Shown here one piece after another: positions 23,731 to 41,187 of a stretch of DNA of 64,000 nt. The stretch covers positions 1 to 64,000 of the IMG/VR virus record IMGVR_UViG_3300035665_000001; one strand, written 5' to 3'. Position 1 is the stretch's first letter. The number at the start of each line of letters is the position of its first letter. The position numbers and the translations under genes were made by a program. Under the pieces are notes generated by a model. It did no database searches. It had not been told where the DNA came from and saw only the letters and a program-made list of their open reading frames with translations.

Positions 23731-24243
23731 TCACGAGTCCCAAAAATCTCGATAATCTAACCCAAATTTATAAGGATTAACTTTATTAAGTCCAATAACA
23801 TAAAAAATATAAGATGCCACCCCCGATCCACGCATAAAATATACACCTGCCGATGTTTTATCAAGGTGACGTTTTAATAAAAAAGCCATTTTTAGTAATA
23901 ATTCATTATGATTATGTTTACATATATAGTTAAATTCTTCACGAATGTAATCAGAACTATCAGGAAACTTTTGAATCAATTGTGTAATTTCTTTTTCCAA
24001 ATCAACATAATTTAACAATGAATAGTTAAAAGGTTTAATATTATCACTAAAAACTTTAATTCCATTAGATGATGCATACATTAAATCTCGTTCATCATCT
24101 GAAATATACTCTGCATATGACCCCAACATATCAGACACCTTTTCTAAATTTAAACCAGAATTCATTATAAACGAATTAGAATAAAATAGTTTGTTATGTT
24201 CATCCGAATAAATTAAACCTTCTGCCAATTTTTTCATAACCAT
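23731..24243 (-). CDS. DNA polymerase III alpha (DnaE)-like fragment carrying the RGS motif
   Basis: MRGSGVASYIFYVIGLNKVNPYKFGLDYRDF corresponds to DnaE GRGS.AGSLV.Y.LGIT.VDP....L.FERF. Confidence 0.8.
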   Translation of the reverse strand: MVMKKLAEGLIYSDEHNKLFYSNSFIMNSGLNLEKVSDMLGSYAEYISDDERDLMYASSNGIKVFSDNIKPFNYSLLNYVDLEKEITQLIQKFPDSSDYIREEFNYICKHNHNELLLKMAFLLKRHLDKTSAGVYFMRGSGVASYIFYVIGLNKVNPYKFGLDYRDFWDS

Positions 24244-24271
24244 TTTTAATCCTGTATTTCACACATAATCA

Positions 24272-24679
24272 TTACTTTGCTTGCATCAAATGTAGTAACA
24301 CTAATTCTGGATACTTTTCCTCAAATTCAGAAACCATATTAACAGCAATTAAAAAATTTTGTCTATCAATTTCAGTTAAAGTAGTATGAGTCTTTAAAGT
24401 TCTACCTTTTATATCATTTTCATGTTTATATTCAATATCATGGTATTCCCTTATAAATTTAACCGAAGCATAAATTTTAGCTTCCAATTGAGTATCAAAC
24501 AAATTCGTAGTGGGACAACATAATTTCTTACCAAGAGTGGTTTCAATAAATGCCAACTTATCACTATCTAGAGATTCGGGTGAATGAAATTTTTCTTCTT
24601 GTGGGTTTAGTATTTCATTTAATTTTGTACTTACAAGCCATACTATATCACCATATTTCTTTTCTGTCATATCAATCAT
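24272..24679 (-). CDS. Hypothetical protein
   Basis: ORF in a tightly packed operon. Confidence 0.7.
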   Translation of the reverse strand: MIDMTEKKYGDIVWLVSTKLNEILNPQEEKFHSPESLDSDKLAFIETTLGKKLCCPTTNLFDTQLEAKIYASVKFIREYHDIEYKHENDIKGRTLKTHTTLTEIDRQNFLIAVNMVSEFEEKYPELVLLHLMQAK

Positions 24680-24687
24680 AACTAAAA

Positions 24688-25290
24688 CTATTGTTCCCCC
24701 GAAATCATACTAAAAACTCTATCTGGTCGTTCATCAACAATAATATTTTTTATTTTATTAACTACTTGAGCATCATCATGTATTGCGTTAACAAGGGTAT
24801 AAAGTAAATCTCGATTATTATCTTTTTCTACTAATAAAGTTGCATTTTTCAGTTTTGCCTGATAATAACATGGAGTAATAATAACACCATTAACCATAGT
24901 AATTATAGGTGCTATTTCATCAAACGCAGTTGGGTTTATTTCAATAGTAAAACCATATGGATGTTCTAAAATAACCCAGGCAGTTGATGTTCCATGACGC
25001 AGACTACGAAATTTCCAACCACTTCGATATTTTTCTTCAATAATAAAAGTTCGAATTTTTGATGAAACACGCCAATTTCCACGCCAATTTTCAAATGACA
25101 TAGGTAAACTACCATTCTTATTCAACCGCACCATAAAACCAACATCACCATGAACTTTTAATAAAAACTCATCATCATTTAATTTCTTAATTTTTTTAAT
25201 ATCATCAATATCAATTTCTCTAATATCATCAACTTCTGTTATATCAATCATACTACACCATTTTTTAATTGTTGAATTTTGAAAAATCAT
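24688..25290 (-). CDS. Hypothetical phage protein
   Basis: ORF overlapping the upstream helicase fragment; start uncertain. Confidence 0.7.
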   Translation of the reverse strand: MIFQNSTIKKWCSMIDITEVDDIREIDIDDIKKIKKLNDDEFLLKVHGDVGFMVRLNKNGSLPMSFENWRGNWRVSSKIRTFIIEEKYRSGWKFRSLRHGTSTAWVILEHPYGFTIEINPTAFDEIAPIITMVNGVIITPCYYQAKLKNATLLVEKDNNRDLLYTLVNAIHDDAQVVNKIKNIIVDERPDRVFSMISGEQ

Positions 25291-26410
25291 CTAAATCGAT
25301 GAAACCTTTTTTTATACCATTATCAATAATACGCTCTAATTTACCTTTATAAAACAATTCACTCATTTCAGACTGTTTTAAATCCCATATAACTAAGTTT
25401 TTCTTTGGTCTAGTAACAGCAGTATAAACTACACGTTTTTCCTCATCAATATTATAAAACCCATCCTCTACCTGTTCAAGTATCGAAAAATCATAAATAA
25501 AAATCACGTTATCCCACTGCAACCCTTTAGCCTTATGCACCGTCATCAATTGTACCTTGTGTGCAGATTTTTCTTCTAAGAATTGTGCCTCGAATAACAT
25601 TTCTTCTAACGCCTCCATCCAATTACTTAATCCCTCTCGATTTTTAACCTCATTTAAATCTCTATAAAATCTTTTCAAAGAATGTTCTACTTGTTCAACA
25701 GTTTTAGTAGGAGATTCAATCATTTTCGCAATTTCTGGAATCGCCAAATGAAAACTACCAAATTCCAAATGTTTGTAAATACTACATATTTCTGGTATTT
25801 GTTTAACATCAGAAAACATATTACTAATATCCTGCATACTAGTACATTTGCTTATACCAGAAGCAATTTTCAAAGGGATACCACCCTTAGCCATCTTAAT
25901 AATATCAACAACAATAGATTTATTATATCCATGACTAACTATCGACAGCATATTCATCAGAAATTTTACTTCAGCTCTTTTAAGAATATCAAATTCTGTG
26001 TGTAGATAATATGGAATTTGTAACTTACCCAATATTTTTGCGAGTTGTTTTATAGCCGCATTAGTTCTAGCCAATATACATGTTTGATGTAGTGGTTTAT
26101 CAAGCAACTTTAATTCATCAATAAATTCCTCAGAATCGTAAATATTGTAAACATCACCGGCATGTGTATTGGCGGCTTTTGAAATTTTAGATTCGTCCAA
26201 TGAGTCATTATTAAAATCAATAGTATCAGCAATTTCATTTGCAAGAGAAACAATTTCAGGTGATGATCTAAAATTATAACTTAAAATTTCAACGGTTGGA
26301 TTAAAATCATCTATAAACCTACTCATCAGTTTTGGTTGAGAACCCCGAAACCCATATATGCTCTGTTTTACATCACCCATCATTACCAATTTAGCTTTGT
26401 TTGAATTCAT
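25265..26410 (-). CDS. UvrD/PcrA-like SF1 helicase, C-terminal fragment (motifs III-VI)
   Basis: GDVKQSIYGFRGS (III), NFRSSPEI (IV), ILARTN (IVa), MTVHKAKGLQW (V), EEKRVVYTAVTRPK (VI). Own AAGGA SD 9 nt before the ATG. Confidence 0.9.
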   Translation of the reverse strand: MNSNKAKLVMMGDVKQSIYGFRGSQPKLMSRFIDDFNPTVEILSYNFRSSPEIVSLANEIADTIDFNNDSLDESKISKAANTHAGDVYNIYDSEEFIDELKLLDKPLHQTCILARTNAAIKQLAKILGKLQIPYYLHTEFDILKRAEVKFLMNMLSIVSHGYNKSIVVDIIKMAKGGIPLKIASGISKCTSMQDISNMFSDVKQIPEICSIYKHLEFGSFHLAIPEIAKMIESPTKTVEQVEHSLKRFYRDLNEVKNREGLSNWMEALEEMLFEAQFLEEKSAHKVQLMTVHKAKGLQWDNVIFIYDFSILEQVEDGFYNIDEEKRVVYTAVTRPKKNLVIWDLKQSEMSELFYKGKLERIIDNGIKKGFIDLDDFSKFNN

Positions 26411-27368
26411 AATCTAGTTTCCTTTCGATACTTTCATTGTATTTTATTCGTATTAATTTAATATTTTTTTTACTGCAATAATCATCTTTGAGTTTATCGT
26501 TATCCTGGCGATGTTTTAATTTTTGTTGTTTTTCACACTCAGACAAATCTAATTTTTTAGAAAAAGGATAATATTCGAAATGATGAATACCATCAAATTC
26601 AATTATAATATTTTGTTGTGGTAAATAAAAATCATACCTTAATATTGAATACTTAGATTTTCCTCTTAAATCCGAAAATGTTTTTTCTCTTTCAAATTGA
26701 ATATTATTATTCTCCAAATATTCTCGTATTTTGCGTTCACCATGACTCTTGTCAGTAAAACAATTTGGACATCCTAAACTCCCCAAATGATCCCTACCCT
26801 TTCTTTGAAATTGATAACCACATTTCAAGCATTCAATATCAACATCACTATGTTTTCCCAAATAATTCACATACAAAAAAACATCACCAAATATTTTAAC
26901 AGACTCAAGTAAATAATTATCGAATGATATTCTATTTTTTTTGGAAATTTTAGTATTAACACATCGGTCATTTGGACAACCATGTCCAGAAAGATGATTG
27001 CCAGGTATTTGGTAGAATAACGAATTACATTGTAAACACAAAATCCCAATTTTAGTCAAACTGTTAATATAATTTGAGTCAACATACTCATACATATCAC
27101 CATGAACTTTTTTTGCTTTGTTCACAAACTCTCCAAAAGTGTAGGTGTTATGCTTTGCCAACTGTTTATATTGGCATTGTTTGCAACCATGCCCTTTTTG
27201 ATGACTACTATAATTTTGTTCAAAAACTATATTACAAACCTTACAAAAAATTTTAATTTTTCTTAAATTTTTAGTTGAAAACTCATCAGGCACTAATTCA
27301 TAGGAATACTTTAATTTTTGGTCATTGGAAACCTTTTTCAAAAAATCAACTTTCTTCAATATCAACAC
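26391..27368 (-). CDS. Putative homing endonuclease (zinc-ribbon repeats plus C-terminal PD-(D/E)XK/Vsr-like domain) inserted in the helicase gene
   Basis: Repeated CxxC...H..G.GC modules, KKVHGDMYEY, and SHGERKIREYL...LRYDFYLP..NIIIEFDGIHH. Confidence 0.8.
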   Translation of the reverse strand: MLILKKVDFLKKVSNDQKLKYSYELVPDEFSTKNLRKIKIFCKVCNIVFEQNYSSHQKGHGCKQCQYKQLAKHNTYTFGEFVNKAKKVHGDMYEYVDSNYINSLTKIGILCLQCNSLFYQIPGNHLSGHGCPNDRCVNTKISKKNRISFDNYLLESVKIFGDVFLYVNYLGKHSDVDIECLKCGYQFQRKGRDHLGSLGCPNCFTDKSHGERKIREYLENNNIQFEREKTFSDLRGKSKYSILRYDFYLPQQNIIIEFDGIHHFEYYPFSKKLDLSECEKQQKLKHRQDNDKLKDDYCSKKNIKLIRIKYNESIERKLDYEFKQS

Positions 27369-28074
27369 CAGTAATATTTCTTAAACTAATAAGAAAATGA
27401 TATTGGGCATAATTAAGATCTTGAGCCTCATCAGTAATAATGTATTTTACATTCTGAAAAGTAGCACGAACCCTATCAAAACAATCCGCATCATCCAAAA
27501 CAAAATTAGCCAAGTGAATCATAAAATCAAACATAACCAAATTATTTTTAATCAGATATTCTAGCAATCTAAGAGTTTCATCATCAGTAAAATCCTCCAA
27601 CTGTAAATCTTGCGATACATTACTAATAAATTGTTTGTTAAATGTACCTTTTTCCTTCTTTTTGCCATATTTTTTAAATTCTTCTTCCATAAATGCTTCA
27701 GGAAATTCATGCACTATTGTTGGAACAACGGTATAACCAATATCCTGAAAATAAGGTTTTATCAATTCATTCCAGCAAAAAGAATGAATAGTCGAAATGT
27801 ATTTGAAATCATACTTTTGCTTTTCAAAAAATTTATTAACCCTTTCTTTTAGCTCGTTAGCAGCTTTTCGAGTAAAAGAAAATGCAACAATCTCATTAGG
27901 TTTAACACCTTGATTGATTTTATCACTAATAAATTCTACACATGAAGTTGTTTTTCCTGATCCCGCAGCAGCTAAACATAGTACGTGTTTATCCCTTGTA
28001 GAAGCAAATTGTTGTTGTTCATCAGTTAAATTACTTTTCTTACTCACTGGGTTGCTCCGAATTAATTGTTTCAA
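27346..28074 (-). CDS. UvrD/PcrA-like SF1 helicase, N-terminal fragment (Q motif, I, Ia, II)
   Basis: LTDEQQ, AAAGSGKTT, FSFTRKAANELKER, STIHSFC, ITDEAQDLN..QY. Confidence 0.9.
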   Translation of the reverse strand: MKQLIRSNPVSKKSNLTDEQQQFASTRDKHVLCLAAAGSGKTTSCVEFISDKINQGVKPNEIVAFSFTRKAANELKERVNKFFEKQKYDFKYISTIHSFCWNELIKPYFQDIGYTVVPTIVHEFPEAFMEEEFKKYGKKKEKGTFNKQFISNVSQDLQLEDFTDDETLRLLEYLIKNNLVMFDFMIHLANFVLDDADCFDRVRATFQNVKYIITDEAQDLNYAQYHFLISLRNITGVDIEES

Positions 28075-28153
28075 TTAATCAATTATACTCAATATTTTAG
28101 AAAAAAATATATAAATAGTTTTGATTGTTAATTATACACTAAGGAGTACAAAA

Positions 28154-28402
28154 ATGGCAGAATTGAAAAAAACCCCAATTAGATCAGTTAATGAAGATAT
28201 CATCAGTATGGAATTTGATGTAAATCCAAACATTCCTACTGCAAACTATAGCAATGAAACGGCTGAAAGAATTCAACAAGCAATTGTTAAAAAATTGAGA
28301 GCTGAGAAACTGAAAAAAATGATTGAATCTGAATTAAAACAAGATACAAAAGTTCTTGATGGTGAAAGTTTAGGATTCTCATTCACATTCAATAGTATGT
28401 AA
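28154..28402 (+). CDS. Hypothetical late protein
   Basis: AAGGAG SD before ATG 28154; TATAAATA at 28110-28117. Confidence 0.7.
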   Translation: MAELKKTPIRSVNEDIISMEFDVNPNIPTANYSNETAERIQQAIVKKLRAEKLKKMIESELKQDTKVLDGESLGFSFTFNSM

Positions 28403-28409
28403 GATAAAT

Positions 28410-28652
28410 ATGAATGGCGTAGAAAAGAATGAATTCGATTATATCGAACATAAAAAAATAAATGTAAATAAACAACTGTTTTCTCTAATGAGAACGGATT
28501 ATTTTGAAATAGATACAGTTCTAAAAATATTAAATTTAAAAACATTACCAGTTGAAATTTCTGTAAATAACAATCAGGTCTTCATTAGAGATTTAACAAA
28601 TTATATTGTTTCGACTGATTTTAAACTAAAACCAAATATCAATAAAAAGTAA
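28410..28652 (+). CDS. Hypothetical protein
   Basis: 80-aa ORF following the previous gene. Confidence 0.6.
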   Translation: MNGVEKNEFDYIEHKKINVNKQLFSLMRTDYFEIDTVLKILNLKTLPVEISVNNNQVFIRDLTNYIVSTDFKLKPNINKK

Positions 28653-29399
28653 CGCTGCAATTTTACTATCTAAACAGATAACATATTCCAACATCAAAAT
28701 CTTGTAATTCATATCAAACATACGTTTAACCGGTATCTGAACCTTATCAGGTACCGCAATGTTTCCCAAAATTTCAAGTGATTCATCCAAAATAACCTCA
28801 AGATATTTTCCATCTGAAGTTTCCTGCAAATTTGTGGGATCCTCAACAATACTTAAAATAAAATCTCTATATTTATCTACCGTATCCTCTATAGATCTTT
28901 CGGCTTCACGAATATAAAAATCTCTAGGAACAAACCTTTTAGTGTTTCCAACAAACATACTTCTTGGGTAAGTAATTACTTTTGCATTTGTTTCATGACG
29001 AACTGTAAATAGATTCATACCGTTGTACATTTCATTATGATCCAATACAGTGACCTCATCACCACTGTTAATATCGATAAAATGTTTATTTCTAACCGAA
29101 GATGTGTTCCGCCTTCTTTCCTCCATTTGGGTTAATGCAATATTCACATCATCAGTTGTACCCAACACATCTTTAGAAATCTGAATAACAGTAACTCCAG
29201 GGGTATTACCATTATTAGCAACGTTATATTGTAACGCATCATTAACAGCTGATGCGACATTTTTAGTTATGTCATCAACACTTACCGTTTCAACCGAGGT
29301 TACTGGTTGTGGAAGTATTGATTTACCATTTTTTTTGAAAAAAACATCATTAATGTCACCAAAACTTTCCCCACTAATTTTACTAAAATCGAATGCCAT
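28626..29399 (-). CDS. Hypothetical protein
   Basis: 257-aa ORF with AAGG SD. Confidence 0.7.
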   Translation of the reverse strand: MAFDFSKISGESFGDINDVFFKKNGKSILPQPVTSVETVSVDDITKNVASAVNDALQYNVANNGNTPGVTVIQISKDVLGTTDDVNIALTQMEERRRNTSSVRNKHFIDINSGDEVTVLDHNEMYNGMNLFTVRHETNAKVITYPRSMFVGNTKRFVPRDFYIREAERSIEDTVDKYRDFILSIVEDPTNLQETSDGKYLEVILDESLEILGNIAVPDKVQIPVKRMFDMNYKILMLEYVICLDSKIAALLFIDIWF

Positions 29400-29431
29400 T
29401 TTAAATACCTTTTTTAACTATTTTTATATAT

Positions 29432-29568
29432 TATATCTGACATTGAGCAGGGATGTTTCATAAATTTTTGATTTTTAATAACTAAGTTCTTGATGGCATA
29501 AAAAACATCAGAAATACTTACTTATAAATCAATATGTTAAGCTATACCTGCTCAATGTCGGTTATATA
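29432..29568. repeat. Inverted-repeat-bounded intergenic element
   Basis: GACATTGAGCAGG (29439-29451) / CCTGCTCAATGTC (29547-29559), perfect 13 bp and GC-rich relative to background. Confidence 0.8.
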
Positions 29569-29590
29569 GGATATTTATATCATTTTTTAG

Positions 29591-29623
29591 CAAAAAACCC
29601 CAACCTAAAGGTTGGAGTTTTTT
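29591..29623 (-). terminator. Rho-independent terminator after the fibre genes
   Basis: AAAAACCCCAACC-TAAA-GGTTGGAGTTTTT stem with T-runs on both sides. Confidence 0.7.
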
Positions 29624-29635
29624 AAATTAAAATTA

Positions 29636-31036
29636 TCAAAAATACAAATATTCAATCATAACTTTTGCTAATGATGTATCACCAATCTCGGTTAATGTAG
29701 TGTTGTAAATATTCAAATAAGTGCCATCACCAGTAGTACATTCAACATCAAAACTAATACCGGCTGAAGAAACAATTCTCGCAGTACCATAGTGTAATGG
29801 TTTTACGATGTTATGAGTTAACACACCAGTAATTTCAAACTGTGTAAAATCTGTTTGTGCATAAACAGTAATATTCACATTGTTTAATAAAAAAGAATCT
29901 ACTGCAACTCGTGGAATTAAACTAATCGTGTCGGTTAATGCCTGATCACCCAATTGTCTAGCAGTAACTTCATCAGAAACAGAAGTGGCAATTGTTATAT
30001 CCGCGTTTTGTCTAATAACGGCTTCACCTGAAATAGCGTTATTCAACGCAGTTTCAGATACTTGTCTAGCAGTTTTTTCTGCGTTAATTGTAGCAGTTAA
30101 TGTTAAATCAGCAGATTTATATTCTGTGGTTAATATATTTATAGCATCATTATTAGACAATACATAACTTGCAAAAGTAGAATCATTAGTGGTATCAACT
30201 GAATTAACCAAAGTAACAATTTCTGCAAATGAATCTTTATCAGCATCAGATGCAAGTAATATAGAATCAATTCTCATCTTTTCTACTGTAATAGCATTAT
30301 TCAACTTTGCATCTTCGAGTTGTCTACTATTAATTTCATCAGCAAGTAACACAGATAAAGCTGCGTCCGCTGCTTGTCTAGATGCTTCCTCATTAGAAAT
30401 AGATGTAGCCAAAGTTGCATCAACAGTTTGTCTTTTAGTTGATTCTGTTAAGATAGATGTTGATAATGTTACATCGGAAGATTTATATGCAGAATCTAAC
30501 AAACTAATGGTTGACGCTAAAGAGGAATATGCTGTTTGTCTTGCAGACATTTCTGCAGCAATAGAAGTTGATAAACTAACATCCGCCAACTTATATGCTG
30601 AATCCAGGGATGATATTATTGATGTTAAAGTATCATCATTCAATTGTCTAGTATTAGCCTCATTAGCAATTGATGCTGTTAATGAGGTAACTGCAGCATT
30701 TATTGCAGAATTAATTGCTGCAGCAACATTTGCATTTGGATTAACAGTAATGTAATCTGCGATCTCTTTTAATGTGTTTAAGGCTTCAGGGGCGGAACCA
30801 ATTAAATCAGCAATCACCTTTCTAAATGAACCATCAACGTTTGAATCACCATTCAACACAGTTAATAAGTTGTTAATTTGTGTATCTGCTGATGTTCTTT
30901 CAGCAATTTCAGTGTTAATTGCAGTAGCTAATGCTGTTTCCGCATTAGTTGCGTTAGTATTAATCGTTTCCAATAATGAGGCCAAGGTTGTTGGTAAACC
31001 TTTTATACTTCTTTGACTATATGTAATTTGTGTCAT
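29636..31036 (-). CDS. Coiled-coil fibre/structural protein
   Basis: Repeated E..xRQxxD..L coiled-coil units and APEALNTLKEIAD motif typical of phage fibres. Confidence 0.7.
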   Translation of the reverse strand: MTQITYSQRSIKGLPTTLASLLETINTNATNAETALATAINTEIAERTSADTQINNLLTVLNGDSNVDGSFRKVIADLIGSAPEALNTLKEIADYITVNPNANVAAAINSAINAAVTSLTASIANEANTRQLNDDTLTSIISSLDSAYKLADVSLSTSIAAEMSARQTAYSSLASTISLLDSAYKSSDVTLSTSILTESTKRQTVDATLATSISNEEASRQAADAALSVLLADEINSRQLEDAKLNNAITVEKMRIDSILLASDADKDSFAEIVTLVNSVDTTNDSTFASYVLSNNDAINILTTEYKSADLTLTATINAEKTARQVSETALNNAISGEAVIRQNADITIATSVSDEVTARQLGDQALTDTISLIPRVAVDSFLLNNVNITVYAQTDFTQFEITGVLTHNIVKPLHYGTARIVSSAGISFDVECTTGDGTYLNIYNTTLTEIGDTSLAKVMIEYLYF

Positions 31037-31123
31037 CTTTTAATCTCCATAAATTATAATTGTATAGTAGTTTCTACTATTTTTTTTGTATTTAAATCTG
31101 AATATATCAAAATAGTATTTAAA

Positions 31124-33088: not shown

Positions 33089-33115
33089 ATTATAAACTCC
33101 TTATTATGTTTTGTG

Positions 33116-33745: not shown

Positions 33746-33886
33746 AATTAATTTCTCCAATAAAATAATTCTTTTAAACTATATTTATTATCATCTGACA
33801 TTCCTAAACATTTAAACAATTCAAAAAATGTAAAATCTGTAGGATAATAAATAAATTCAACAATTGAGGTTAGAGGATTCAAAATA

Positions 33887-34600
33887 ATGACAACACAAAT
33901 TAATAAGATTATAGCTGTAGAAGGTTTGGATAAAACTGGTAAAACCACATTCGTGGAAGAATTTGATGCCACTTACCATAGTTTATTTGGGTCAACAATA
34001 AACGAATTGAAGAAATTTTCATTTCCCAATGCACTAACTCCCATTGGTAAATCAATTCGGGATGAATTAAATTCTGTGATACCAAACAAATCTATAGTTA
34101 ATACCCCAAACTTTCTTGCTGAGATGTCCCATTATTGGTTAGTCGAATTATTCGAACAACACTATGAAAATTCAATTGAAAAACCCTCCAACAATATCAA
34201 TAAAGAAGTGGTACAGGTAAAAAGTAGAAACTATATCTTTGATAGATATTTCATTTCTACATTAGCATACCAAGCATTTTATAATAATAGTAAAGCAGAT
34301 TTAGATTTTATTAAAACCTCGTTAAACAATAATAAATTTATTAAATTTCCAACAGATATTATTTTACTTGATTTACCAAATTCAATTATAATTGAAAGAA
34401 CTCTAGCAGATAAAGAATCGGGTATAATTGATGCCAATGATACAACAGACGAACTTATTCTTAATAAAAGACGTGAAGCTTATATAAGTGCGATTAAGTT
34501 TTTAAAAGGTGCCGGTATCAATATTCATTGGTTTGAAGATGTTAGTAAAATTGATACCGGTGATCTAGTAAGAGTTTTGATGGGTAAAATTTTCCAATAA
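33887..34600 (+). CDS. tmk: Thymidylate (dTMP) kinase
   Basis: IAVEGLDKTGKTT P-loop; IFDRYFISTLAYQ motif. Confidence 0.88.
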   Translation: MTTQINKIIAVEGLDKTGKTTFVEEFDATYHSLFGSTINELKKFSFPNALTPIGKSIRDELNSVIPNKSIVNTPNFLAEMSHYWLVELFEQHYENSIEKPSNNINKEVVQVKSRNYIFDRYFISTLAYQAFYNNSKADLDFIKTSLNNNKFIKFPTDIILLDLPNSIIIERTLADKESGIIDANDTTDELILNKRREAYISAIKFLKGAGINIHWFEDVSKIDTGDLVRVLMGKIFQ

Positions 34601-34616
34601 CCATCAGTCTTAAAGA

Positions 34617-34814
34617 TTACATAAGTTTTAAAACTTCAATAACTGTAGTTTTTCCACCTAATTTTTTTGAAATAAGTTGCAATTGTTTAAATAAGTCAAT
34701 ATCTTTTTCGGATGCTTCACCATTTTGACACATTGCAACCCATTTTTTAGCATCTTCTTCTGTTGTTTTACCTTTTATTCCAGGTGCACTTTCTTTTAAA
34801 TCACTAATACGCAT
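34617..34814 (-). CDS. Small hypothetical protein
   Basis: AGGAG SD; starts MRISDLKES. Confidence 0.65.
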   Translation of the reverse strand: MRISDLKESAPGIKGKTTEEDAKKWVAMCQNGEASEKDIDLFKQLQLISKKLGGKTTVIEVLKLM

Positions 34815-34830
34815 TATTTTCTCCTTTTTT

Positions 34831-37662
34831 TTAAATATATTTATATTTTTCTATTATTTTTAATTTTAAATCGGGAAATTTATCATCCAACCATAAGGTT
34901 TCAACGGATAAACTATCTTTAAATAAATTAGTTTTGTGCAAATCACTCATAAGAACTTTAAAATCAAACATGGCATCTAAATAAACACCCATAGGTATAT
35001 CTAACAGTTGACGCAATTCAAATTCTTTATCAAGACGAGTTTTACTATCAAAGGTATTCAAATATAATTCAATAAATGTTCCCAATACAATCTTATCACA
35101 TTTTAAATTTTCGGAAAGTAGCATTTTTTTACTTTTTTCACTAATATCTGTCATATAATATGTTATATATTTTACTTCATCATACATGATAGTTCTTATG
35201 GAATCAGAAAATGTTCTTATAAATAATAATTTATCATCTAACGCATCTAAATCATACCCAAATGATTTAATTTCTTCATTCTTTTCATCAATATCACCAC
35301 CATCATACAAATTATATTGTTCAGTTACCAATTTTTTAGATAATAAAAATAAATAGTCATATATTTCATCAAAATTAGTTTTTTCTGTAATATATAGTAC
35401 AGTTTTTAGTGCGATATTAACCGCTTTCAATCGGTGTGGCGTCATTGATGTCAACGTAAATCGTTTATGCCATACACCACTTATCAACTCATAATTATAA
35501 TCATCCGGATTATCTACAACAGACCCTAACAAATCTAAATCTAATTTATCAATAAAACCATCTCTATTAACATCGTAAATTGGTTTTCCATGATTATCAA
35601 ACATTATTGCCTGTGCTAAATCTGGTGAAACAGTTTGTTGACCAGATAATAATTCTTCCTGAGTTATATTTGATTTACCAACATTAGTGATGTCGATATA
35701 TAATTTTGATTTATCAACCAAATTGAGTAATCTATTAGATTTTTCTATTATTGCATCATAATCTAACCCATATTTGTTTTTAATAACATCAAGAATATAT
35801 TTACTATTCAATGAACCAGATTGTAATGATTTATAAGCCAATATACAAACCACATATTCAATCAATTGAGTAAATCTAACATTTAATAAATCACCATAAT
35901 TGAATAAATTATAAAATGATCGATCGAGTTCAAAATCAACTTTCACATTATCATAATTAAATCCAATGTTACACGTTTCAGACACAGTAAATATCCTAAA
36001 ATCAAAATGTTTGATGTCAATATTATTTTTATCAGTAGTAATAACTACCCCACGAATAATAACTTTTTTACCATCAACGAGAATTATCAATCCAAAAGCG
36101 GAATTTATAAGAAGGTCCTTACTATCTACAGTGACAATACCTTCATTGTCACTTGATTCATCAGAAACAACCACACCATTGTTATTTTCTACAATAAGTT
36201 TCAAAGAAATATTTGCCAATGTATGAATTTTTAAAGTGTTATCATCCCCCCATACCAACAAACATTTCAAATCATCTTGACCAACATTATCCGTTTCATA
36301 CGTTGGTGAAATAATATCTTGTATAATTAATGGCAATTTATCGTATGGTATTTCATTCTCATAAACAAATATCGATACTTTTTTTGATAACTTACAACGA
36401 TCATTTAAAGTTTCCTCATGTAACTTTAAAGCTTCTATACCTGCAAGATAACCACTCAACCGATATAGTGTATCAGTAACATCTATCCTAACCGTGCCAA
36501 ACAATGATAATTTGTCAGAATTTAACATAGGTATATTAGTACGATTAAACGCATTTGTAACCAAATTATTATCTAGTAACTTTAAATATATATAAAGAGT
36601 TTCACTCAAATCATTACATAAATCATCTACAATTTTTAAATTACTCTCAATAGAATAAGTGGATAATAATTCTGTCAACTTAGAATTTTCATATAGATAT
36701 TTTAACTCGTTTATCTCATTAACAACATAATTAATTGTATCTGGATAAAACACTTTTTTTTGTCCCTTGTAATCAACTGTCAATTTACTTGAATCGATAA
36801 CATTGCCATTGGCATCTAATCGATGATTATCAATTAAAATCTTATACCAATCAAACGCAATTTTATACTCTTTGTCTATTATGGTATTACGCACAAATCC
36901 TTCCAAGCTACCCAATCTATCCTCAGTAATTATTTTTTTAGGTTTATAATCGTTCAAATCACGTATTTTATTACCAACACTATAATCGGTATCATCCAAT
37001 TTAACACCACCATATCTATTATCTAACATACTCAGTTCAAATTTTAGATTTGTCGACCAAATTTTTGGTTGTGTTATAATATATCCAGTCAAATAAAATG
37101 TCATGGTGACAACAGCTGAACATTTTTGTGATTCAGGGTCAGTATCAATTTCAACAGAATCTAGAAAAACCTCAGTTGTAGAAATAGGTGAACCTGGCAA
37201 TGGTTCAATTGTTACTTGTTGTGGTGAGTTAAAATATGGTATTATTTGTTCAGTTATTTCGAAAGCTTGATAATCGGATGATGCCCAACAAACCAACTCC
37301 ATCGTAAATTTATATGGTGAGGGATTCATGGTAACATAACCAATGTTATACCCATATTTACGCATATCAACAGTGATAGTATCATGCGGTGCACGTCTTT
37401 TATCAGTATTTCTCTCAATACCAACCATTCTAAATGATAACATAGGAATACTAATATCCTTCAATCTATTAACATTTGAGGTTGCATCATTATCAACATT
37501 ATTTTCAAGATGGGATATAACATCTGAAGGTGAACCATAATTGATAGGTACAACTTTTATCTTTCCAGTTGCATCAGAATATGGAATTTCAGAGAATAAA
37601 CTCGCAAACCCAACCAAATATGTTTTTATTTGTTGACCATTGAAATGTAGATTTTTATTCAT
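34831..37662 (-). CDS. Tail terminator/sheath stabiliser (T4 gp15-like) with long C-terminal extension
   Basis: HFNGQQIKTYLVGFASLFS..VVPINYG..IPMLSF..PSPYKFTMEL..QAFEITEQIIPYFN is the gp15 pattern. Follows gp13/gp14; late promoter at 37697-37704. Confidence 0.8.
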   Translation of the reverse strand: MNKNLHFNGQQIKTYLVGFASLFSEIPYSDATGKIKVVPINYGSPSDVISHLENNVDNDATSNVNRLKDISIPMLSFRMVGIERNTDKRRAPHDTITVDMRKYGYNIGYVTMNPSPYKFTMELVCWASSDYQAFEITEQIIPYFNSPQQVTIEPLPGSPISTTEVFLDSVEIDTDPESQKCSAVVTMTFYLTGYIITQPKIWSTNLKFELSMLDNRYGGVKLDDTDYSVGNKIRDLNDYKPKKIITEDRLGSLEGFVRNTIIDKEYKIAFDWYKILIDNHRLDANGNVIDSSKLTVDYKGQKKVFYPDTINYVVNEINELKYLYENSKLTELLSTYSIESNLKIVDDLCNDLSETLYIYLKLLDNNLVTNAFNRTNIPMLNSDKLSLFGTVRIDVTDTLYRLSGYLAGIEALKLHEETLNDRCKLSKKVSIFVYENEIPYDKLPLIIQDIISPTYETDNVGQDDLKCLLVWGDDNTLKIHTLANISLKLIVENNNGVVVSDESSDNEGIVTVDSKDLLINSAFGLIILVDGKKVIIRGVVITTDKNNIDIKHFDFRIFTVSETCNIGFNYDNVKVDFELDRSFYNLFNYGDLLNVRFTQLIEYVVCILAYKSLQSGSLNSKYILDVIKNKYGLDYDAIIEKSNRLLNLVDKSKLYIDITNVGKSNITQEELLSGQQTVSPDLAQAIMFDNHGKPIYDVNRDGFIDKLDLDLLGSVVDNPDDYNYELISGVWHKRFTLTSMTPHRLKAVNIALKTVLYITEKTNFDEIYDYLFLLSKKLVTEQYNLYDGGDIDEKNEEIKSFGYDLDALDDKLLFIRTFSDSIRTIMYDEVKYITYYMTDISEKSKKMLLSENLKCDKIVLGTFIELYLNTFDSKTRLDKEFELRQLLDIPMGVYLDAMFDFKVLMSDLHKTNLFKDSLSVETLWLDDKFPDLKLKIIEKYKYI

Positions 37663-37758
37663 ATTTAGTTAAACCTTATAAGTAGAAACACACCTATATT
37701 TATAACCCATTTGAAGAAAAAATATCAATTATAAGATTATCAAAAAAAGATAACCAAC

Positions 37759-38520
37759 CTATAATCGCATAGTCATGATGTCCAATTCAGTATCAAGTGA
37801 TCGTTTTTTAGGTTTACTAGGATTGTCGGATTTTACTTTTTGTTGTTTTATTTCTTCATTGGAAGCAATTTGAGTTTTACCATCCATGATATTTAACACT
37901 TCTTCTAACTTAGCGTATGTATCTTTATAGTTTTCACCAACATCATCAAACTTATCTAACTGTGATGTATAATTGTCATATGTCGCCTTATTCAATGTTA
38001 ACATACAAAATATGTTTTCCCATAAATTTGCATTTCCATAAAAAACATCTGTTACTTTGTATCTAGTTACATCCCTAACAGTTTCAACTATGTCACCGAT
38101 AAGTGGTTTTCTACCTAACTTTTCAGACAATTCATCAACATGCAAAAATATTTGCTGATCGCTACCCATTGGCATCATAACTCCCCATTTAGACATATCC
38201 ATTTGATATTCCTGTGGTGTCCATGTACCTATCATATCAATAGGTTCTCCCAAAACGATGGAGTTAGTATCTTTCAAGATATTATCATCAAAAACAGTAT
38301 TTGGATTTTTAGAATTTGGATCAATGGGGAAATATTTTAATGGGGCACCATTCAATCTAACTTTTTCTCTTGCGATGCGTTTGATTAACTTAATATCTTT
38401 CAATTTTGCATTATTTTTCCCAGCATATACTTTTAAAGAGTCAGGACCAGATTCTTTAATCGAGTGAGTTATTGAAAAACCGGTTGGTAAAATTTCATTT
38501 AAAAATGATTCTCTGTTCAT
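37759..38520 (-). CDS. Neck protein (T4 gp14-like)
   Basis: REKVRLNG..LKYFP, MSKWG, LGRKPLIGDIV; synteny with gp13 and gp15. Confidence 0.7.
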   Translation of the reverse strand: MNRESFLNEILPTGFSITHSIKESGPDSLKVYAGKNNAKLKDIKLIKRIAREKVRLNGAPLKYFPIDPNSKNPNTVFDDNILKDTNSIVLGEPIDMIGTWTPQEYQMDMSKWGVMMPMGSDQQIFLHVDELSEKLGRKPLIGDIVETVRDVTRYKVTDVFYGNANLWENIFCMLTLNKATYDNYTSQLDKFDDVGENYKDTYAKLEEVLNIMDGKTQIASNEEIKQQKVKSDNPSKPKKRSLDTELDIMTMRL

Positions 38521-38673
38521 GACATTTCCCGAATATTGATAGATACTATATATTTATGCCAAAAAATTATATTATCAATACGATATTGTTAAGAAATTTT
38601 AAATATTATCGTGTGTTGGTTAAATACAAAACCACTATAAGGTAACTATTTTTAGATGCGGACTATGCAAAAT

Positions 38674-39348
38674 TTACCCAATGTATATGCCACCACAATC
38701 CAATACTGACTTATCCCATAATTCCTGTTCTAATTTGTCGATTTCAGTTTGAGCTTGAGAAATCAAATCGGAACCATTCATAGATAAATCATTTGGAGCA
38801 GAGACGCCAGTGTATTTACTTCTTATCAAACCAAGATTAAATTTTGCTTGTGCGAGTGCATATTTTTGTACCCATGGATCACCGTAAATTGGTGCCAAAT
38901 CTTTATATTTCATAACTTTAGCGGCAACATTTTTATCAGTTGTAGGTGCAAAATCTGTTTGAAAATAACGAACGCCATCCTTATACAAGATACGAGTGTG
39001 TACCGGATTAGTTGTTTTTTGTAAAGCATTATCATTTTGTATCATCCCCAACATAGTAATCTCATATGCCTGTCCAAAAGTCTCAGGAATAAGTGTTACA
39101 CCAGTTCCACCAGTTAACGCATTTATAGAAATAATGAAATCAACGTCATCGGGTACTAAATGATAATTTTTACCTGCGGTTAAACGCAATACCGTCCATT
39201 CTTCATTCCATGCTTCAGACGAATTGTGTCCATAATAATTGATGGTATGATAGATAATCATATCCAAATCGGAATCCGATAATTCAACATCAGTTTGAGA
39301 GGAACCCAACATAGATAAAATGTAGGTTTTTAAAAAATCTTTAGTCAT
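38674..39348 (-). CDS. Neck protein (T4 gp13-like)
   Basis: LKTYILSMLG...DVEL; WVQKYALAQAKFNLGLIRSKY...MNGSDLISQAQTEIDKLE. Confidence 0.85.
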   Translation of the reverse strand: MTKDFLKTYILSMLGSSQTDVELSDSDLDMIIYHTINYYGHNSSEAWNEEWTVLRLTAGKNYHLVPDDVDFIISINALTGGTGVTLIPETFGQAYEITMLGMIQNDNALQKTTNPVHTRILYKDGVRYFQTDFAPTTDKNVAAKVMKYKDLAPIYGDPWVQKYALAQAKFNLGLIRSKYTGVSAPNDLSMNGSDLISQAQTEIDKLEQELWDKSVLDCGGIYIG

Positions 39349-39378
39349 TGTGAATTCCTCTAAACAAAAAAGTATATT

Positions 39379-39741
39379 TTATCTTTTTTTCAATAATTTA
39401 TTTTTTACTTCTTGTGTTTCAGTATTATTTTCAGCAACAGTAACCACTGAATCTTCAACTTCGACAGCAATAGTATCAGTGGTAACATCAGCTACTTCTT
39501 CAACTTTAGTAATTTTATCTTCAACTTTTGCTTGTTGTTTAGCAGTTGATTTAACTTCATCAATAACTGGTTCAATTACATCTGGAACCTCACCAACCAA
39601 TCTTAAAACTCGCAAATAACCACCTGTTAACTTTTGATCAACAGTTACTTTTGAACCTTTAAAAAGGGTAACAGTTTTACTCTTCCCAGGAATTGTAAAG
39701 TTAAAAAGTCCAGTTTGTGTACTTTCATATACATAAGCCAT
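39379..39741 (-). CDS. Hypothetical protein
   Basis: AGGAG SD before ATG 39741 (MAYVYES). Confidence 0.7.
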   Translation of the reverse strand: MAYVYESTQTGLFNFTIPGKSKTVTLFKGSKVTVDQKLTGGYLRVLRLVGEVPDVIEPVIDEVKSTAKQQAKVEDKITKVEEVADVTTDTIAVEVEDSVVTVAENNTETQEVKNKLLKKR

Positions 39742-39788
39742 ATTTATTTCTCCTAATTTTATGATATATTTATGATTCAACAAAAAAA

Positions 39789-40133
39789 TTAATTTTCAAT
39801 TAAACTAGTTGTTATTGTATGTAAATATCTTCTGAATTTCGCCTTCTCAGATTTTGCCCTTGAAAGTTCTTTTTCTTGTTGATTCAAATATTTATCATTT
39901 TTTTGTTGATGTGATAATTGTGTTGATGATTTAACAGTTTTAATCGTCACATCTATACTTCTAATTATGCGATCATAAAAATCTAATAGTTCCCTTATTC
40001 GAGATTTTGTTTGTCTAAGTATTTTTTGATTTGATTCTCCAGCAAGAATACTTTTTATTTCTTTTTCAGTAATAAATTTTTTCGTAGCCTCAGCTTCAAT
40101 TTCAGACTTAGGACCACCAACATTAACTATCAT
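39789..40133 (-). CDS. Hypothetical coiled-coil protein
   Basis: ORF with AGGTG SD. Confidence 0.65.
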   Translation of the reverse strand: MIVNVGGPKSEIEAEATKKFITEKEIKSILAGESNQKILRQTKSRIRELLDFYDRIIRSIDVTIKTVKSSTQLSHQQKNDKYLNQQEKELSRAKSEKAKFRRYLHTITTSLIEN

Positions 40134-40143
40134 TTATCACCTA

Positions 40144-40425
40144 TTATTCAAAAATAGTTTTACCTTCACGCATTACTTTACAACCCAATTCATCTCTTGC
40201 AGGTTTTGTAAAAGTTTCACCAGTTTTTGGATTTCTAACTTTTCTATCATTTTTATGTTTTTTAAATACTTTAAATAATGAACCAAATTTAATTTCACCA
40301 CCAGCTTTAACTTCCTCTACAATAACCTCCAAAATACCATCCCAAATACGATCACATTCAGATTTTGAAACTTTTTCTTCACCAATGATTTTTTGTAATT
40401 GTACAACTAACTCTGATTTTGTCAT
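40144..40425 (-). CDS. HU/IHF-family DNA-binding protein
   Basis: MTKSELV...RKVRNPKTGE arm motif. Confidence 0.9.
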   Translation of the reverse strand: MTKSELVVQLQKIIGEEKVSKSECDRIWDGILEVIVEEVKAGGEIKFGSLFKVFKKHKNDRKVRNPKTGETFTKPARDELGCKVMREGKTIFE

Positions 40426-40533
40426 TTTTTTATTCCTTCTCTTTTGTTTAAATTTTATTAGTTAAAATAAGTTGTTTCTTTTATTTTTATTTATATCTTT
40501 TTTCCCGCAAATCTTATAAAATAAACATTTTTT

Positions 40534-41187
40534 TCATAATTTAGTAGTTTTTTTTAAAAAATCTATCAACAGGATGTATGCATATCCAATCGAATGTGGT
40601 TTTTTATATCTATACTTACCATCATTAATACCCAACAGCTTAAATTGCTCATCAAAAACGGGAATTCCATAAGTTTCATCTAAAATTTTTCTATCATTTT
40701 CAGATTTATTTTTTAAAAGTTTATCGGTGTGAATATAATTTTTCATTTTATCATAATTATGCAATGCACCCGGTCTAATAATAGCTATCACAATTGCAAT
40801 ATCTAATACAGATGAAACCTCAAACTCCCGCAAAATAAACGGATATTTGGTTAATTGATACGGAAATTCATAGTTCCAAAGTTGATGCCAATCAATATTA
40901 TTTTCATCGATCAATTTAACGAAAATATCCAAATCCTGTGATGTAATACCATCCAAATAGGTATTGTTTAAAATATCTATCTTTTGGTATTCGCATTTTT
41001 CCATAGTTTTATAATCTAAAACAGCAACACCATTAAATGATGGAACTGTTTTGTAGAAATATACCCCTGCAGGATGTGGTTGTCTATCACCGCGATCGTT
41101 AATAACACATCCACGAATAAGGTTCTTTTTTATATTGTTAGATTCAAGCGATGGAATATCCAAATCTAAATCTGATAATTTAACCAT
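40534..41187 (-). CDS. Minimal DNA polymerase III alpha (DnaE)-like catalytic fragment
   Basis: SDLDLD (DxD), HPAGV, KIDIL (third Asp), AIIRPG and YKKPHSIGY motifs in DnaE order. Confidence 0.8.
   Translation of the reverse strand: MVKLSDLDLDIPSLESNNIKKNLIRGCVINDRGDRQPHPAGVYFYKTVPSFNGVAVLDYKTMEKCEYQKIDILNNTYLDGITSQDLDIFVKLIDENNIDWHQLWNYEFPYQLTKYPFILREFEVSSVLDIAIVIAIIRPGALHNYDKMKNYIHTDKLLKNKSENDRKILDETYGIPVFDEQFKLLGINDGKYRYKKPHSIGYAYILLIDFLKKTTKL

What the first reader, a model, noticed from the sequence alone, without database searches (positions are those of the whole stretch)
23731..41187. Minimal DnaE-like polymerase core split over two small genes 16 kb apart, without inteins
Seen: a 170-aa ORF ends with the RGS...F segment, and a 217-aa ORF begins almost exactly where DnaE continues (DLDLD) and has HPAGV, KID, IRPG and KKPHS. 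No PHP, clamp-binding or OB region and no Cys/His-Asn intein ends are visible. Known: DnaE is ~1100 aa. Inference: a ~390-aa heterodimeric C-family nucleotidyltransferase retaining all three catalytic Asp. It may have a non-replicative role such as priming, repair or DNA modification next to a T4-like replisome.
Basis: partly seen in the sequence, partly recalled or inferred. Interest (0 to 1): 0.65.

Follow-up and report, generated by a model that had tools for sequence, protein, structure and literature searches.

The report
Split mini Pol III polymerase, known kind

Summary
ORF-A (23731-24243, minus strand, 170 aa) ends about where the Pol III alpha palm reaches E. coli residue 393. ORF-B (40534-41187, minus strand, 217 aa) starts about 5 residues further on, at the DxDxD strand, and carries the KxD, RPG and KKxH motifs. 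No PHP or HhH piece exists in the 306-kb record, which is about 85% complete, and there is no room for inteins.

It is not new as a kind. Iyer et al. 2021 (PMC7824862) described this minimal Pol III alpha, split into two distantly encoded proteins, in group 2.2 jumbo phages that also have PolB. Both ORFs match that family's PHROGs.

What this work adds:
- The breakpoint is the same in about 150 IMG/VR loci.
- The halves co-occur in 5 of 5 cultured phages and in 8 of 8 records that are at least 45% complete. They are never adjacent (3.5-200 kb apart).
- Co-folding supports a composite palm: ipSAE 0.90, best control 0.00.
- The window's lineage is the most divergent branch. It keeps a DnaE finger segment that the other members compared lack.
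- Its PolB is itself encoded in three unlinked genes.

The function, probably an accessory DNA polymerase, is untested.

The parts
23731..24243 (-). ORF-A, 170 aa (databases aa from the ATG at 24237). This is the N-half of the split mini Pol III alpha. It has a lineage-specific N-terminal region of about 87 aa, then the palm helices and the RGS nucleotide-triphosphate-binding loop. It ends at the position of E. coli alpha residue ~393.
23824..23832 (-). Codons of R138-G139-S140, the GS (NTP-binding) motif of the Pol-beta-like nucleotidyltransferase fold. It is invariant in 53 sequences.
   Evidence: in 79/80 IMG/VR loci the frame is short and in nearly all it ends 32 residues after this Arg
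40534..41187 (-). ORF-B, 217 aa, the C-half of the split mini Pol III alpha. It holds the catalytic Asp strand, a hairpin in place of the thumb, the KxD strand and a shortened fingers region that runs to the KKxH helix (about E. coli alpha residue 780).
41158..41172 (-). Codons of D6-L-D8-L-D10. D6 and D8 align to E. coli D401/D403, the metal-binding pair, and D10 aligns to D405.
   Evidence: offset derived; in 71 IMG/VR loci the motif mostly lies 1-6 residues after the start codon
40975..40983 (-). Codons of K69-I-D71, the KxD motif holding the third catalytic Asp. It aligns to Mtb DnaE1 K-M-D in 'LLKMDFL'.
40768..40776 (-). Codons of R138-P139-G140, the RPG finger motif. It aligns to E. coli 'FRPGP'.
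40645..40692 (-). Codons of R166-Q181, 'RKILDETYGIPVFDEQ'. This is a DnaE finger segment, 10/16 identical to Mtb DnaE1 'REILAETYGLIVYQEQ'. This lineage keeps it, and all five cultured-phage homologues compared lack it.
   Evidence: modelled with low confidence
40594..40605 (-). Codons of K195-K196-P197-H198. K196 aligns to E. coli K758 and H198 to E. coli H760.
   Evidence: in the co-fold this helix contacts the RGS loop of ORF-A

Best explanation
ORF-A and ORF-B are the two subunits of the phage-specific 'minimal split Pol III alpha' of T4-related (group 2.2) large phages.

The Pol-beta-like nucleotidyltransferase palm is cut in the loop between the helix after the GS motif and the strand that carries the two metal-binding Asp. 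A supplies the triphosphate-binding RGS loop. B supplies D6, D8 and D71 plus the KxD, RPG and KKxH nucleotide and template contacts. Neither chain can be active alone. The two associate without covalent linkage, by continuing one beta-sheet across the break, and so rebuild a single active site.

The enzyme lacks the PHP domain, the thumb, the distal fingers, the clamp-binding HhH domain and the OB domain. The most likely activity is a short-patch, poorly processive DNA polymerase that works beside the phage's PolB in replication or repair. This follows the proposal of Iyer et al.

How firmly each step stands:
- Shown here: homology, the breakpoint, conservation of the catalytic set, co-occurrence, and absence of other DnaE parts in the record.
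- Supported only in silico: heterodimer formation.
- Inferred: catalytic activity, DNA versus other substrates, and the biological role.

My separate odds are: family membership 0.95, obligate heterodimer 0.8, templated DNA polymerase 0.5.
For: - Family scans and PDB profile alignments place A and B colinearly on Pol III alpha, with about 5 residues missing at the junction.
- Both match the small PHROGs that hold the RaK2, CBB, SCTP-2 and Atu_ph07 proteins.
- The family is described in PMC7824862, sections 3.4.1 and 3.5.
- The catalytic and nucleotide-binding residues are the invariant columns at about 20-30% identity. That argues for an active enzyme under selection.
- The breakpoint is the same family-wide. 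79/80 A-like frames are short, nearly all ending 32 residues after the RGS Arg. 71/80 B-like frames have DxDxD mostly 1-6 residues after the start.
- Each half occurs exactly once in 5/5 cultured phages.
- A is present in 11/14 large B-bearing IMG/VR records, in 3/3 complete ones and in 8/8 that are at least 45% complete.
- Close relatives (57-73% identity) keep both genes, their lengths and their synteny.
- Co-fold: ipSAE 0.90/0.89/0.90 against a best control of 0.00. There are 153-160 contacts, runs agree in at least 96% of contacts, and partner pLDDT is at least 90. The mark was reached by 58/80 solved complexes and 2/110 mismatched pairs. The tightest contacts are A134-137 with B9-12, and A142-143 with B197-201.
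- B's fold matches only C-family polymerases; the top 15 hits are DnaE or PolC.
- H198 aligns to E. coli H760. From memory, H760 is the proposed steric gate against ribonucleotides, which would favour dNTP use.
- In cultured phages A lies 3-4 genes from the gp44 clamp loader and B 2-3 genes from the gp61/gp41 primase-helicase.
Against: - No biochemical or genetic data exist for any member, and no follow-up literature was found.
- The co-fold may simply recall intramolecular DnaE contacts. It shows likeness, not binding.
- The parts that hold primer-template DNA in DnaE (thumb, distal fingers, HhH domain) are missing, so templated synthesis is not assured.
- Expression of B was not shown. RNA-library contigs lie on the neighbouring genes only.
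- In 10 A-bearing IMG/VR fragments no B was found. The tree suggests B is off-contig, because their only fairly complete relative has the genes 186 kb apart, but support is modest at 81/84.
- The record is about 85% complete, so a further DnaE piece in the missing part cannot be excluded.
Confidence: 0.8

Rival explanations
1. The heterodimer is an active Pol-beta-fold nucleotidyltransferase but not a templated DNA polymerase. It might do template-independent tailing, de novo or primer synthesis, or make a nucleotide product used in phage-host conflict.
For: - The thumb, distal fingers and HhH DNA-binding parts are absent.
- Only the triphosphate- and metal-binding residues are invariant.
- The 'YGxxVYQEQ' finger segment is dispensable in most of the family.
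- In cultured phages B lies just upstream of the primase-helicase.
Against: - H198, the equivalent of E. coli H760, and the RPG and KKxH finger motifs that contact the incoming dNTP and template in DnaE are all kept.
- The closest structural matches are replicative polymerases only.
- Both genes sit in replisome clusters in cultured phages.
- There is no positive evidence for any alternative substrate.
Confidence: 0.15
2. The two ORFs are catalytically dead remnants of a degraded DnaE, either pseudogene fragments or proteins with a purely structural role.
For: Both are short. The Pfam match of A is just below the cut-off. No expression evidence was obtained for B.
Against: - Lengths and the exact breakpoint are conserved over about 150 loci.
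- Every catalytic residue is invariant at about 20-30% identity.
- Dozens of relatives at 50-73% identity have intact frames.
- The halves co-occur strictly in complete genomes.
Confidence: 0.03
3. The halves are rejoined into one chain, or other DnaE pieces elsewhere in the genome rebuild a conventional Pol III alpha. Routes would be split inteins, trans-splicing, or a 'fractured gene' with a homing endonuclease.
For: - Split-intein DnaE exists in cyanobacteria (own knowledge).
- 'Fractured genes' occur in T4-like metagenomic phages (PMC2677866, listed).
- This genome does have a helicase gene split by an HNH endonuclease.
Against: - A ends 3 residues after the last DnaE-like residue, and B begins 5 residues before DxDxD, so there is no room for an N-intein of about 100 aa or a C-intein of about 35 aa.
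- More than 15 genes, including late structural genes, lie between the two.
- Separation varies from 3.5 to 200 kb across the family.
- There is no PHP or HhH match anywhere in the record.
- No Rfam intron family is found in the window.
Confidence: 0.02

Closest known systems
Minimal split DNA polymerase III alpha of group 2.2 jumbo phages (Iyer, Anantharaman, Krishnan, Burroughs & Aravind 2021, Viruses 13:63; PHROGs 11127 and 11778; e.g. RaK2 ORF162 + ORF124, CBB, SCTP-2 gp291 + gp151, Atu_ph07)
   Same: - Two stand-alone proteins of about 170 and 200 aa, with the same breakpoint and the same invariant catalytic set.
- The genes are unlinked but on one strand.
- No other Pol III domains are present, and a family B polymerase and T4-type genes occur in the same genome.
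   Different: - Identity to the cultured members is only 19-27%, and the lineage sits on its own long branch (4.41, support 100/100).
- The N-terminal ~87 aa of A align poorly with the others.
- B keeps the DnaE finger segment 'RKILDETYGIPVFDEQ' that the others lack.
- The neighbours differ: gp46/47-like genes and a UvrD-type helicase plus gp55-like sigma factor here, primase-helicase and clamp loader in cultured phages.
- The family also occurs in a 141-kb phage that is not jumbo, Slicko01.
Bacterial replicative Pol III alpha (DnaE; e.g. E. coli 2HNH/5FKV, Taq 2HPI/3E0D, Mtb DnaE1 5LEW/7PU7)
   Same: Colinear homology of the palm and proximal fingers, with the GS loop, the three catalytic Asp, and the KxD, RPG and KSH motifs. 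The only significant structural matches are to this family.
   Different: - Two chains totalling about 390 aa instead of one chain of about 1160 aa.
- No PHP domain.
- The thumb is reduced to a hairpin: about 45 residues lie between DxD and KxD, against about 150 in Mtb DnaE1.
- The fingers are cut after the KSH helix.
- No HhH/beta-binding, OB or tau-binding domains.
Split-intein DnaE of cyanobacteria (dnaE-n / dnaE-c; own knowledge)
   Same: A C-family polymerase encoded by two unlinked genes.
   Different: There the break lies in the fingers and is healed by protein trans-splicing into a full-length enzyme. Here the break lies inside the palm, no intein halves exist, and the product is minimal.
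Split gp43 PolB of some T4-related phages, and 'fractured genes' (PMC2677866; Slicko01 PolB in two adjacent ORFs)
   Same: A phage polymerase assembled from separately translated pieces. The same genome has its PolB in three pieces.
   Different: Those splits are usually adjacent and linked to homing endonucleases or inteins. The mini Pol III split is ancient, uniform across the family and always dispersed.

Membership tests
Split minimal Pol III alpha of group 2.2 phages (Iyer et al. 2021) | Sequence membership in the two dedicated protein families | tested here: met
   A matches phrog_11127 at 1.5e-9 and B matches phrog_11778 at 3.2e-19. The same models hit RaK2, CBB, SCTP-2, Atu_ph07 and Slicko01 once each.
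Split minimal Pol III alpha of group 2.2 phages (Iyer et al. 2021) | N-terminal unit is a stand-alone small protein with the NTP-binding GS motif, ending before the metal-binding strand | tested here: met
   It is 170 aa, RGS is invariant, and it ends at E. coli alpha ~393. In 79/80 IMG/VR loci the frame is short, and in nearly all it ends 32 residues after the Arg.
Split minimal Pol III alpha of group 2.2 phages (Iyer et al. 2021) | C-terminal unit is a stand-alone small protein starting at the Mg-binding DxD, followed by template-binding finger motifs | tested here: met
   It is 217 aa, with D6, D8, D71, RPG and KKxH invariant. In 71 loci DxDxD mostly lies 1-6 residues after the start codon.
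Split minimal Pol III alpha of group 2.2 phages (Iyer et al. 2021) | The two genes are distantly located | tested here: met
   They are 16.3 kb apart on the same strand. In relatives the gap is 3.5-200 kb and the genes are never adjacent.
Split minimal Pol III alpha of group 2.2 phages (Iyer et al. 2021) | No other Pol III alpha domains in the genome | tested here: met
   PF07733 and PF17657 each occur once, and PF02811 and PF14579 are absent from the 306-kb record. Caveat: the record is about 85% complete and the OB domain was not searched separately.
Split minimal Pol III alpha of group 2.2 phages (Iyer et al. 2021) | Accompanied by a family B polymerase and T4-type genes | tested here: met
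   PolB is present with its exonuclease domain and motifs A, B and C, but in three unlinked ORFs. gp46/47-like, gp55-like, gp13/gp15-like and tail sheath genes are present. No DnaB-type helicase was found.
Split minimal Pol III alpha of group 2.2 phages (Iyer et al. 2021) | The halves reconstitute one enzyme | tested here: inconclusive
   Prediction only. ipSAE was 0.90 against a best control of 0.00, runs agreed in at least 96% of contacts, and partner pLDDT was at least 90. This may reflect memory of the DnaE fold. No experiment exists.
Bacterial DnaE / Pol III alpha (C-family replicase) | Pol-beta-like palm with GS motif and three catalytic Asp | tested here: met
Bacterial DnaE / Pol III alpha (C-family replicase) | N-terminal PHP domain | tested here: not met
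   There is no PF02811 match in the record at E <= 10, while the control rings in 14/14 genomes. The N-terminal 87 aa of A have no family match.
Bacterial DnaE / Pol III alpha (C-family replicase) | Thumb, full fingers, HhH/beta-clamp-binding and OB domains on one polypeptide | tested here: not met
   There are two chains. About 45 residues replace the thumb, B ends near E. coli residue 780, and there is no PF14579 match.
Split-intein DnaE / fractured genes | Intein halves at the break (N-intein of about 100 aa, C-intein of about 35 aa), with or without a homing endonuclease between the halves | tested here: not met
   A ends 3 residues after F167 and B starts 5 residues before D6. The 16 kb between them holds more than 15 unrelated genes.

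The most novel reading that the evidence does not exclude
In this deep-branching freshwater lineage, every DNA polymerase is assembled from unlinked gene pieces: PolB from three and mini Pol III from two. Its mini Pol III keeps a DnaE finger element that the rest of the family lost. That would mean the 'minimal' enzyme arose by stepwise reduction of a full DnaE, not as a relic of a primordial minimal polymerase as proposed in 2021. The composite active site might also serve a role other than ordinary templated replication.
Probability: 0.25. Interest if true: 0.6.

Novelty: new member of a known kind. Interest (0 to 1): 0.4.

Why it matters
The split mini Pol III is the smallest natural C-family polymerase core known, and nobody has tested it.
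- If the heterodimer is active, it defines the minimal catalytic unit of the bacterial replicase fold.
- It would be a natural example of an active site shared between two unlinked gene products.
- It raises the question of why large T4-related phages keep a second, bacterial-type polymerase beside PolB.

This divergent freshwater member widens the family's known range. It offers a variant with an extra DnaE finger element, useful for comparing structure and function and for deciding whether the family is reduced or ancestral. As a discovery, though, the phenomenon is already in the literature.

Tried and rejected
- Megablast of 15 kb of the window against cultured phages found no match.
- tblastn of ORF-A against cultured phages found only a weak Atu_ph07 hit, so profiles were needed.
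- The Foldseek search with A alone was not significant, although its top 10 hits were all Pol III alpha.
- RaK2 gp44, gp61, gp52 and two neighbour proteins used as tblastn probes against the record gave nothing at 1e-3 because they are too distant.
- The DnaB_C family search of the record found nothing.
- The search for related loci with the two PolB pieces found no relatives in IMG/VR by single-protein patterns.
- T4 late-promoter boxes (TATAAATA) are not more frequent than chance in the window (17 against 16.8). None lies directly upstream of A or B, and one lies between B and the HU gene.
- Rfam and tRNA scans of the window found nothing.
- Expression: RNA-library contigs lie on HU and gp46 but not on B. 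Coverage is sparse and such libraries can hold DNA, so there is no conclusion.
- Reverse co-occurrence: B was not found in 10 A-bearing fragments. I take this as B lying off-contig, from the tree, but it is not proven.
- A possible clamp-binding tail in B ('IDFLKK') was considered and dropped. It lies inside the modelled KKxH helix and is not conserved in cultured members.
- The large representative-protein search was not used, since the family scans and the word search settled the identity.
- No alternative genetic code was needed.

Full report
**1. The observation**

The window is the first 64 kb of a 306,333-bp IMG/VR virus record. The record is 30.1% G+C and CheckV estimates it as 85% complete. 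It occurs in lake and freshwater metagenomes from many studies.

ORF-A:
- Residues 95-167 match the Pol III alpha NTPase/palm family PF07733 at E 5.5e-5. The score is 23.3 bits, just under the 23.9-bit cut-off.
- It also matches phrog_11127 at 1.5e-9.

ORF-B:
- It matches the Pol III finger family PF17657 at E 5.8e-8, above the cut-off.
- It also matches phrog_11778 at 3.2e-19.

Independent lake-water assemblies reproduce ORF-B and its junction with the upstream gene without a single difference. The arrangement is therefore not an assembly artefact.

**2. Where the break lies**

A profile of the A half aligns its residues 88-167 to E. coli Pol III alpha 275-393 (E 4e-7) and to M. tuberculosis DnaE1 335-407. 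The B half aligns from DnaE1 residue 412 ('SMPDIDIDF'). Only about five residues of a DnaE are missing at the junction.

By the constant offset of 14 between the two reference enzymes, the residues correspond as follows:

| ORF-B residue | Equivalent |
|---|---|
| D6 | E. coli D401 |
| D8 | E. coli D403 |
| D10 | E. coli D405 |
| K69-x-D71 | Mtb DnaE1 K-M-D in 'LLKMDFL' (third catalytic Asp) |
| R138-P139 | E. coli 'FRPGP' |
| K196 | E. coli K758 |
| H198 | E. coli H760 |

That D401, D403 and D555 are the catalytic residues is my own knowledge of the literature.

In fold terms, the cut lies inside the Pol-beta-like nucleotidyltransferase core. It falls between the helix after the GS loop and the strand with the two metal-binding Asp.

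There is no room for inteins. A stops three residues after its last DnaE-like residue, and B begins five residues before D6.

**3. It is a conserved system, not an accident**

Close relatives:
- Both proteins have dozens of metagenomic relatives at 50-73% identity with nearly constant lengths of about 168 aa and 213-219 aa.
- On related contigs the synteny is kept. The B side reads gp47-like, gp46-like, B, HU, then gp13 and gp15. The A side reads UvrD-type helicase, two small genes, then A. Both genes are on one strand, about 19 kb apart.

Family-wide breakpoint:
- In IMG/VR, 79 of 80 A-like loci are short frames of 165-201 aa (one is 310 aa). Nearly all end exactly 32 residues after the Arg of RGS, at '...EFL[RK]' followed by the stop.
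- 71 of 80 B-like frames are 182-236 aa, with DxDxD mostly 1-6 residues after the nearest start codon.

Conserved residues. In alignments of 53 and 55 diverse sequences (about 20-30% identity to the window), the invariant columns are the active-site set:
- A: E103, L117, R138, G139, S140, S144, F167.
- B: D6, D8, H38, G41, K69, D71, L73, W100, A131, R138, P139, K195, K196, H198.

**4. Co-occurrence**

Each half occurs exactly once, on the same strand, in all five cultured phages tested:

| Phage | Separation of the halves |
|---|---|
| Alishewanella Slicko01 (141 kb, so not a jumbo phage) | 11 kb |
| RaK2 | 33 kb |
| CBB | 33 kb |
| SCTP-2 | 116 kb |
| Atu_ph07 | 182 kb |

Of the 14 largest B-bearing IMG/VR records, 11 also hold A. 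That includes 3 of 3 complete records and 8 of 8 that are at least 45% complete. Separations there run from 3.5 to 200 kb.

The reverse test failed. None of 10 A-bearing fragments (17-56% complete) showed B, even with my own broader profile. A tree of the A halves puts 9 of these 10 in one clade, with modest support of 81/84. That clade includes the one fairly complete member, whose genes lie 186 kb apart. B is therefore probably off-contig in those fragments, but this remains a caveat.

**5. No other DnaE parts, and a separate PolB**

Six-frame family searches of the whole record find PF07733 only at A and PF17657 only at B. They find no PHP and no HhH domain.

A family B polymerase is present but is itself in three unlinked plus-strand genes:

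| Piece | Coordinates in the record | Length | Content | Evidence |
|---|---|---|---|---|
| 1 | 246953-248692 | 579 aa | N-terminal and exonuclease part | PF03104 1.3e-15; RaK2 gp43 residues 51-416 |
| 2 | 257123-257830 | 235 aa | Motif A 'DFASMYPS' | RaK2 gp43 residues 405-558 |
| 3 | 279267-280169 | 300 aa | Motif B 'KLYLNLVYG' and motif C 'YIDTDV' | Read in the translation |

The Pfam scores of pieces 2 and 3 are below the cut-off.

Piece 2 is a conserved stand-alone protein of 227-238 aa in at least 50 relatives. By contrast, RaK2, CBB and SCTP-2 each have one contiguous PolB of about 1000 aa.

**6. Structure**

AlphaFold2 models:
- B: mean pLDDT 82, pTM 0.76. Its only significant PDB matches are C-family polymerases, and the top 15 hits are DnaE or PolC.
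- A alone: modelled well only for residues 81-170. It gives weak matches, again led by Pol III alpha.

Co-folding A with B:
- ipSAE was 0.90, 0.89 and 0.90, against a best control of 0.00.
- There were 153-160 contacts, the runs agreed in at least 96% of contacts, and partner pLDDT was at least 90.
- That mark was reached by 58 of 80 solved complexes and by 2 of 110 mismatched pairs.
- The tightest contacts join the strand before RGS (A134-137) to the DLDLD strand (B9-12), and the RGS loop (A142-143) to the KKPHS helix (B197-201). This is the geometry of one palm continued across the break.
- The tool's own caveat applies. The model may be recalling the intramolecular contacts of DnaE, so this shows likeness and does not prove binding.

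**7. Comparison with what is known**

Iyer et al. 2021 (PMC7824862, sections 3.4.1 and 3.5, Figure 3b) described this system. [quoted passage not shown] They suggested a role in synthesis of one strand or in repair. I found no later work on it.

The window's genes meet every defining feature of that family that could be tested. They fail the domain features that define a bacterial DnaE.

What is specific to this case:
- The lineage is the most divergent branch of the family (branch length 4.41, support 100/100).
- Its B half keeps 'RKILDETYGIPVFDEQ', which is 10/16 identical to Mtb DnaE1 'REILAETYGLIVYQEQ' and lies in the right order between the RPG and KSH motifs. All cultured members compared lack this segment. 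This hints at reduction from a longer DnaE. That is an inference, and it needs a rooted tree.
- Its neighbours differ. Here they are the gp46/47-like nuclease genes for B, and a UvrD-type helicase and a gp55-like sigma factor for A. In cultured phages they are the primase-helicase and the clamp loader.

**8. Mechanism and verdict**

The best-supported reading is an obligate A-B heterodimer that rebuilds a minimal C-family active site. It would act as an accessory, poorly processive DNA polymerase beside PolB.

The alignment of H198 to E. coli H760 fits dNTP use, if H760 is indeed the proposed steric gate against ribonucleotides (from memory). The loss of the thumb, distal fingers and HhH domain keeps a non-templated or priming activity open.

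The finding is real and correctly interpreted, but it is a new and divergent member of a published kind.

No alternative genetic code was used.

Noticed in passing
Outside the window, same record: G000:C1:246953-248692, 257123-257830, 279267-280169 (all + strand): The phage's family B DNA polymerase is encoded in three unlinked genes, 8.4 and 21.4 kb apart. They are the N-terminal/exonuclease part (579 aa), a motif A piece (235 aa), and a piece with motifs B and C (300 aa). The motif A piece is a conserved stand-alone protein in at least 50 relatives, whereas RaK2, CBB and SCTP-2 have one contiguous gene. No intein-sized extensions were seen.
   Followed up: partly
window 25265-28074 (- strand): A UvrD-type helicase gene is split into two ORFs, 27346-28074 (242 aa) and 25265-26410 (381 aa), by an inserted HNH homing-endonuclease gene at 26391-27368 (325 aa). 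Relatives have an intact 606-aa helicase. The halves start and end at the helicase match, so there is no room for split inteins, and no Rfam intron was found.
   Followed up: partly
window 40488-40495 (- strand), also 37697, 22108, 20159, 5470 and 3174: T4-type late-promoter-like TATAAATA boxes lie just upstream of several minus-strand genes, including HU and the gp15-like gene. One separates ORF-B from the HU gene, which suggests that B ends an early or middle unit. The total count is not above chance: 17 against 16.8 expected.
   Followed up: partly
window 55749-63407 (+), 5522-9952 (-), 9945-12137 (-): Very large ORFs of 2552, 1476 and 730 aa. The latter two have no PHROG match at E <= 1e-5, and the 2552-aa ORF was not scanned.
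   Followed up: no
window 1110-3140 and 3413-5032 (- strand): Two neighbouring paralogous ATPase-like genes both match phrog_1297.
   Followed up: no
Cultured phage loci L017-L020 (Slicko01, SCTP-2, CBB, RaK2): In all four, the B-half gene is immediately followed by a small opposite-strand gene of about 110-125 aa and then a gene of about 320 aa before the primase-helicase. This conserved mini-synteny could mark functional partners. The window's lineage lacks it.
   Followed up: no
IMG/VR locus L064 (contig IMGVR_UViG_3300025534_000213, about 110-112 kb): One A-like frame is 310 aa instead of about 175 aa. It has an extra N-terminal extension of unknown nature but the usual C-terminal end.
   Followed up: no
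Atu_ph07 record NC_042013.1:211898-214837: The PolB match in Atu_ph07 contains two in-frame stops (1 TGA, 1 TAA), so that gene may be interrupted or split as well.
   Followed up: no
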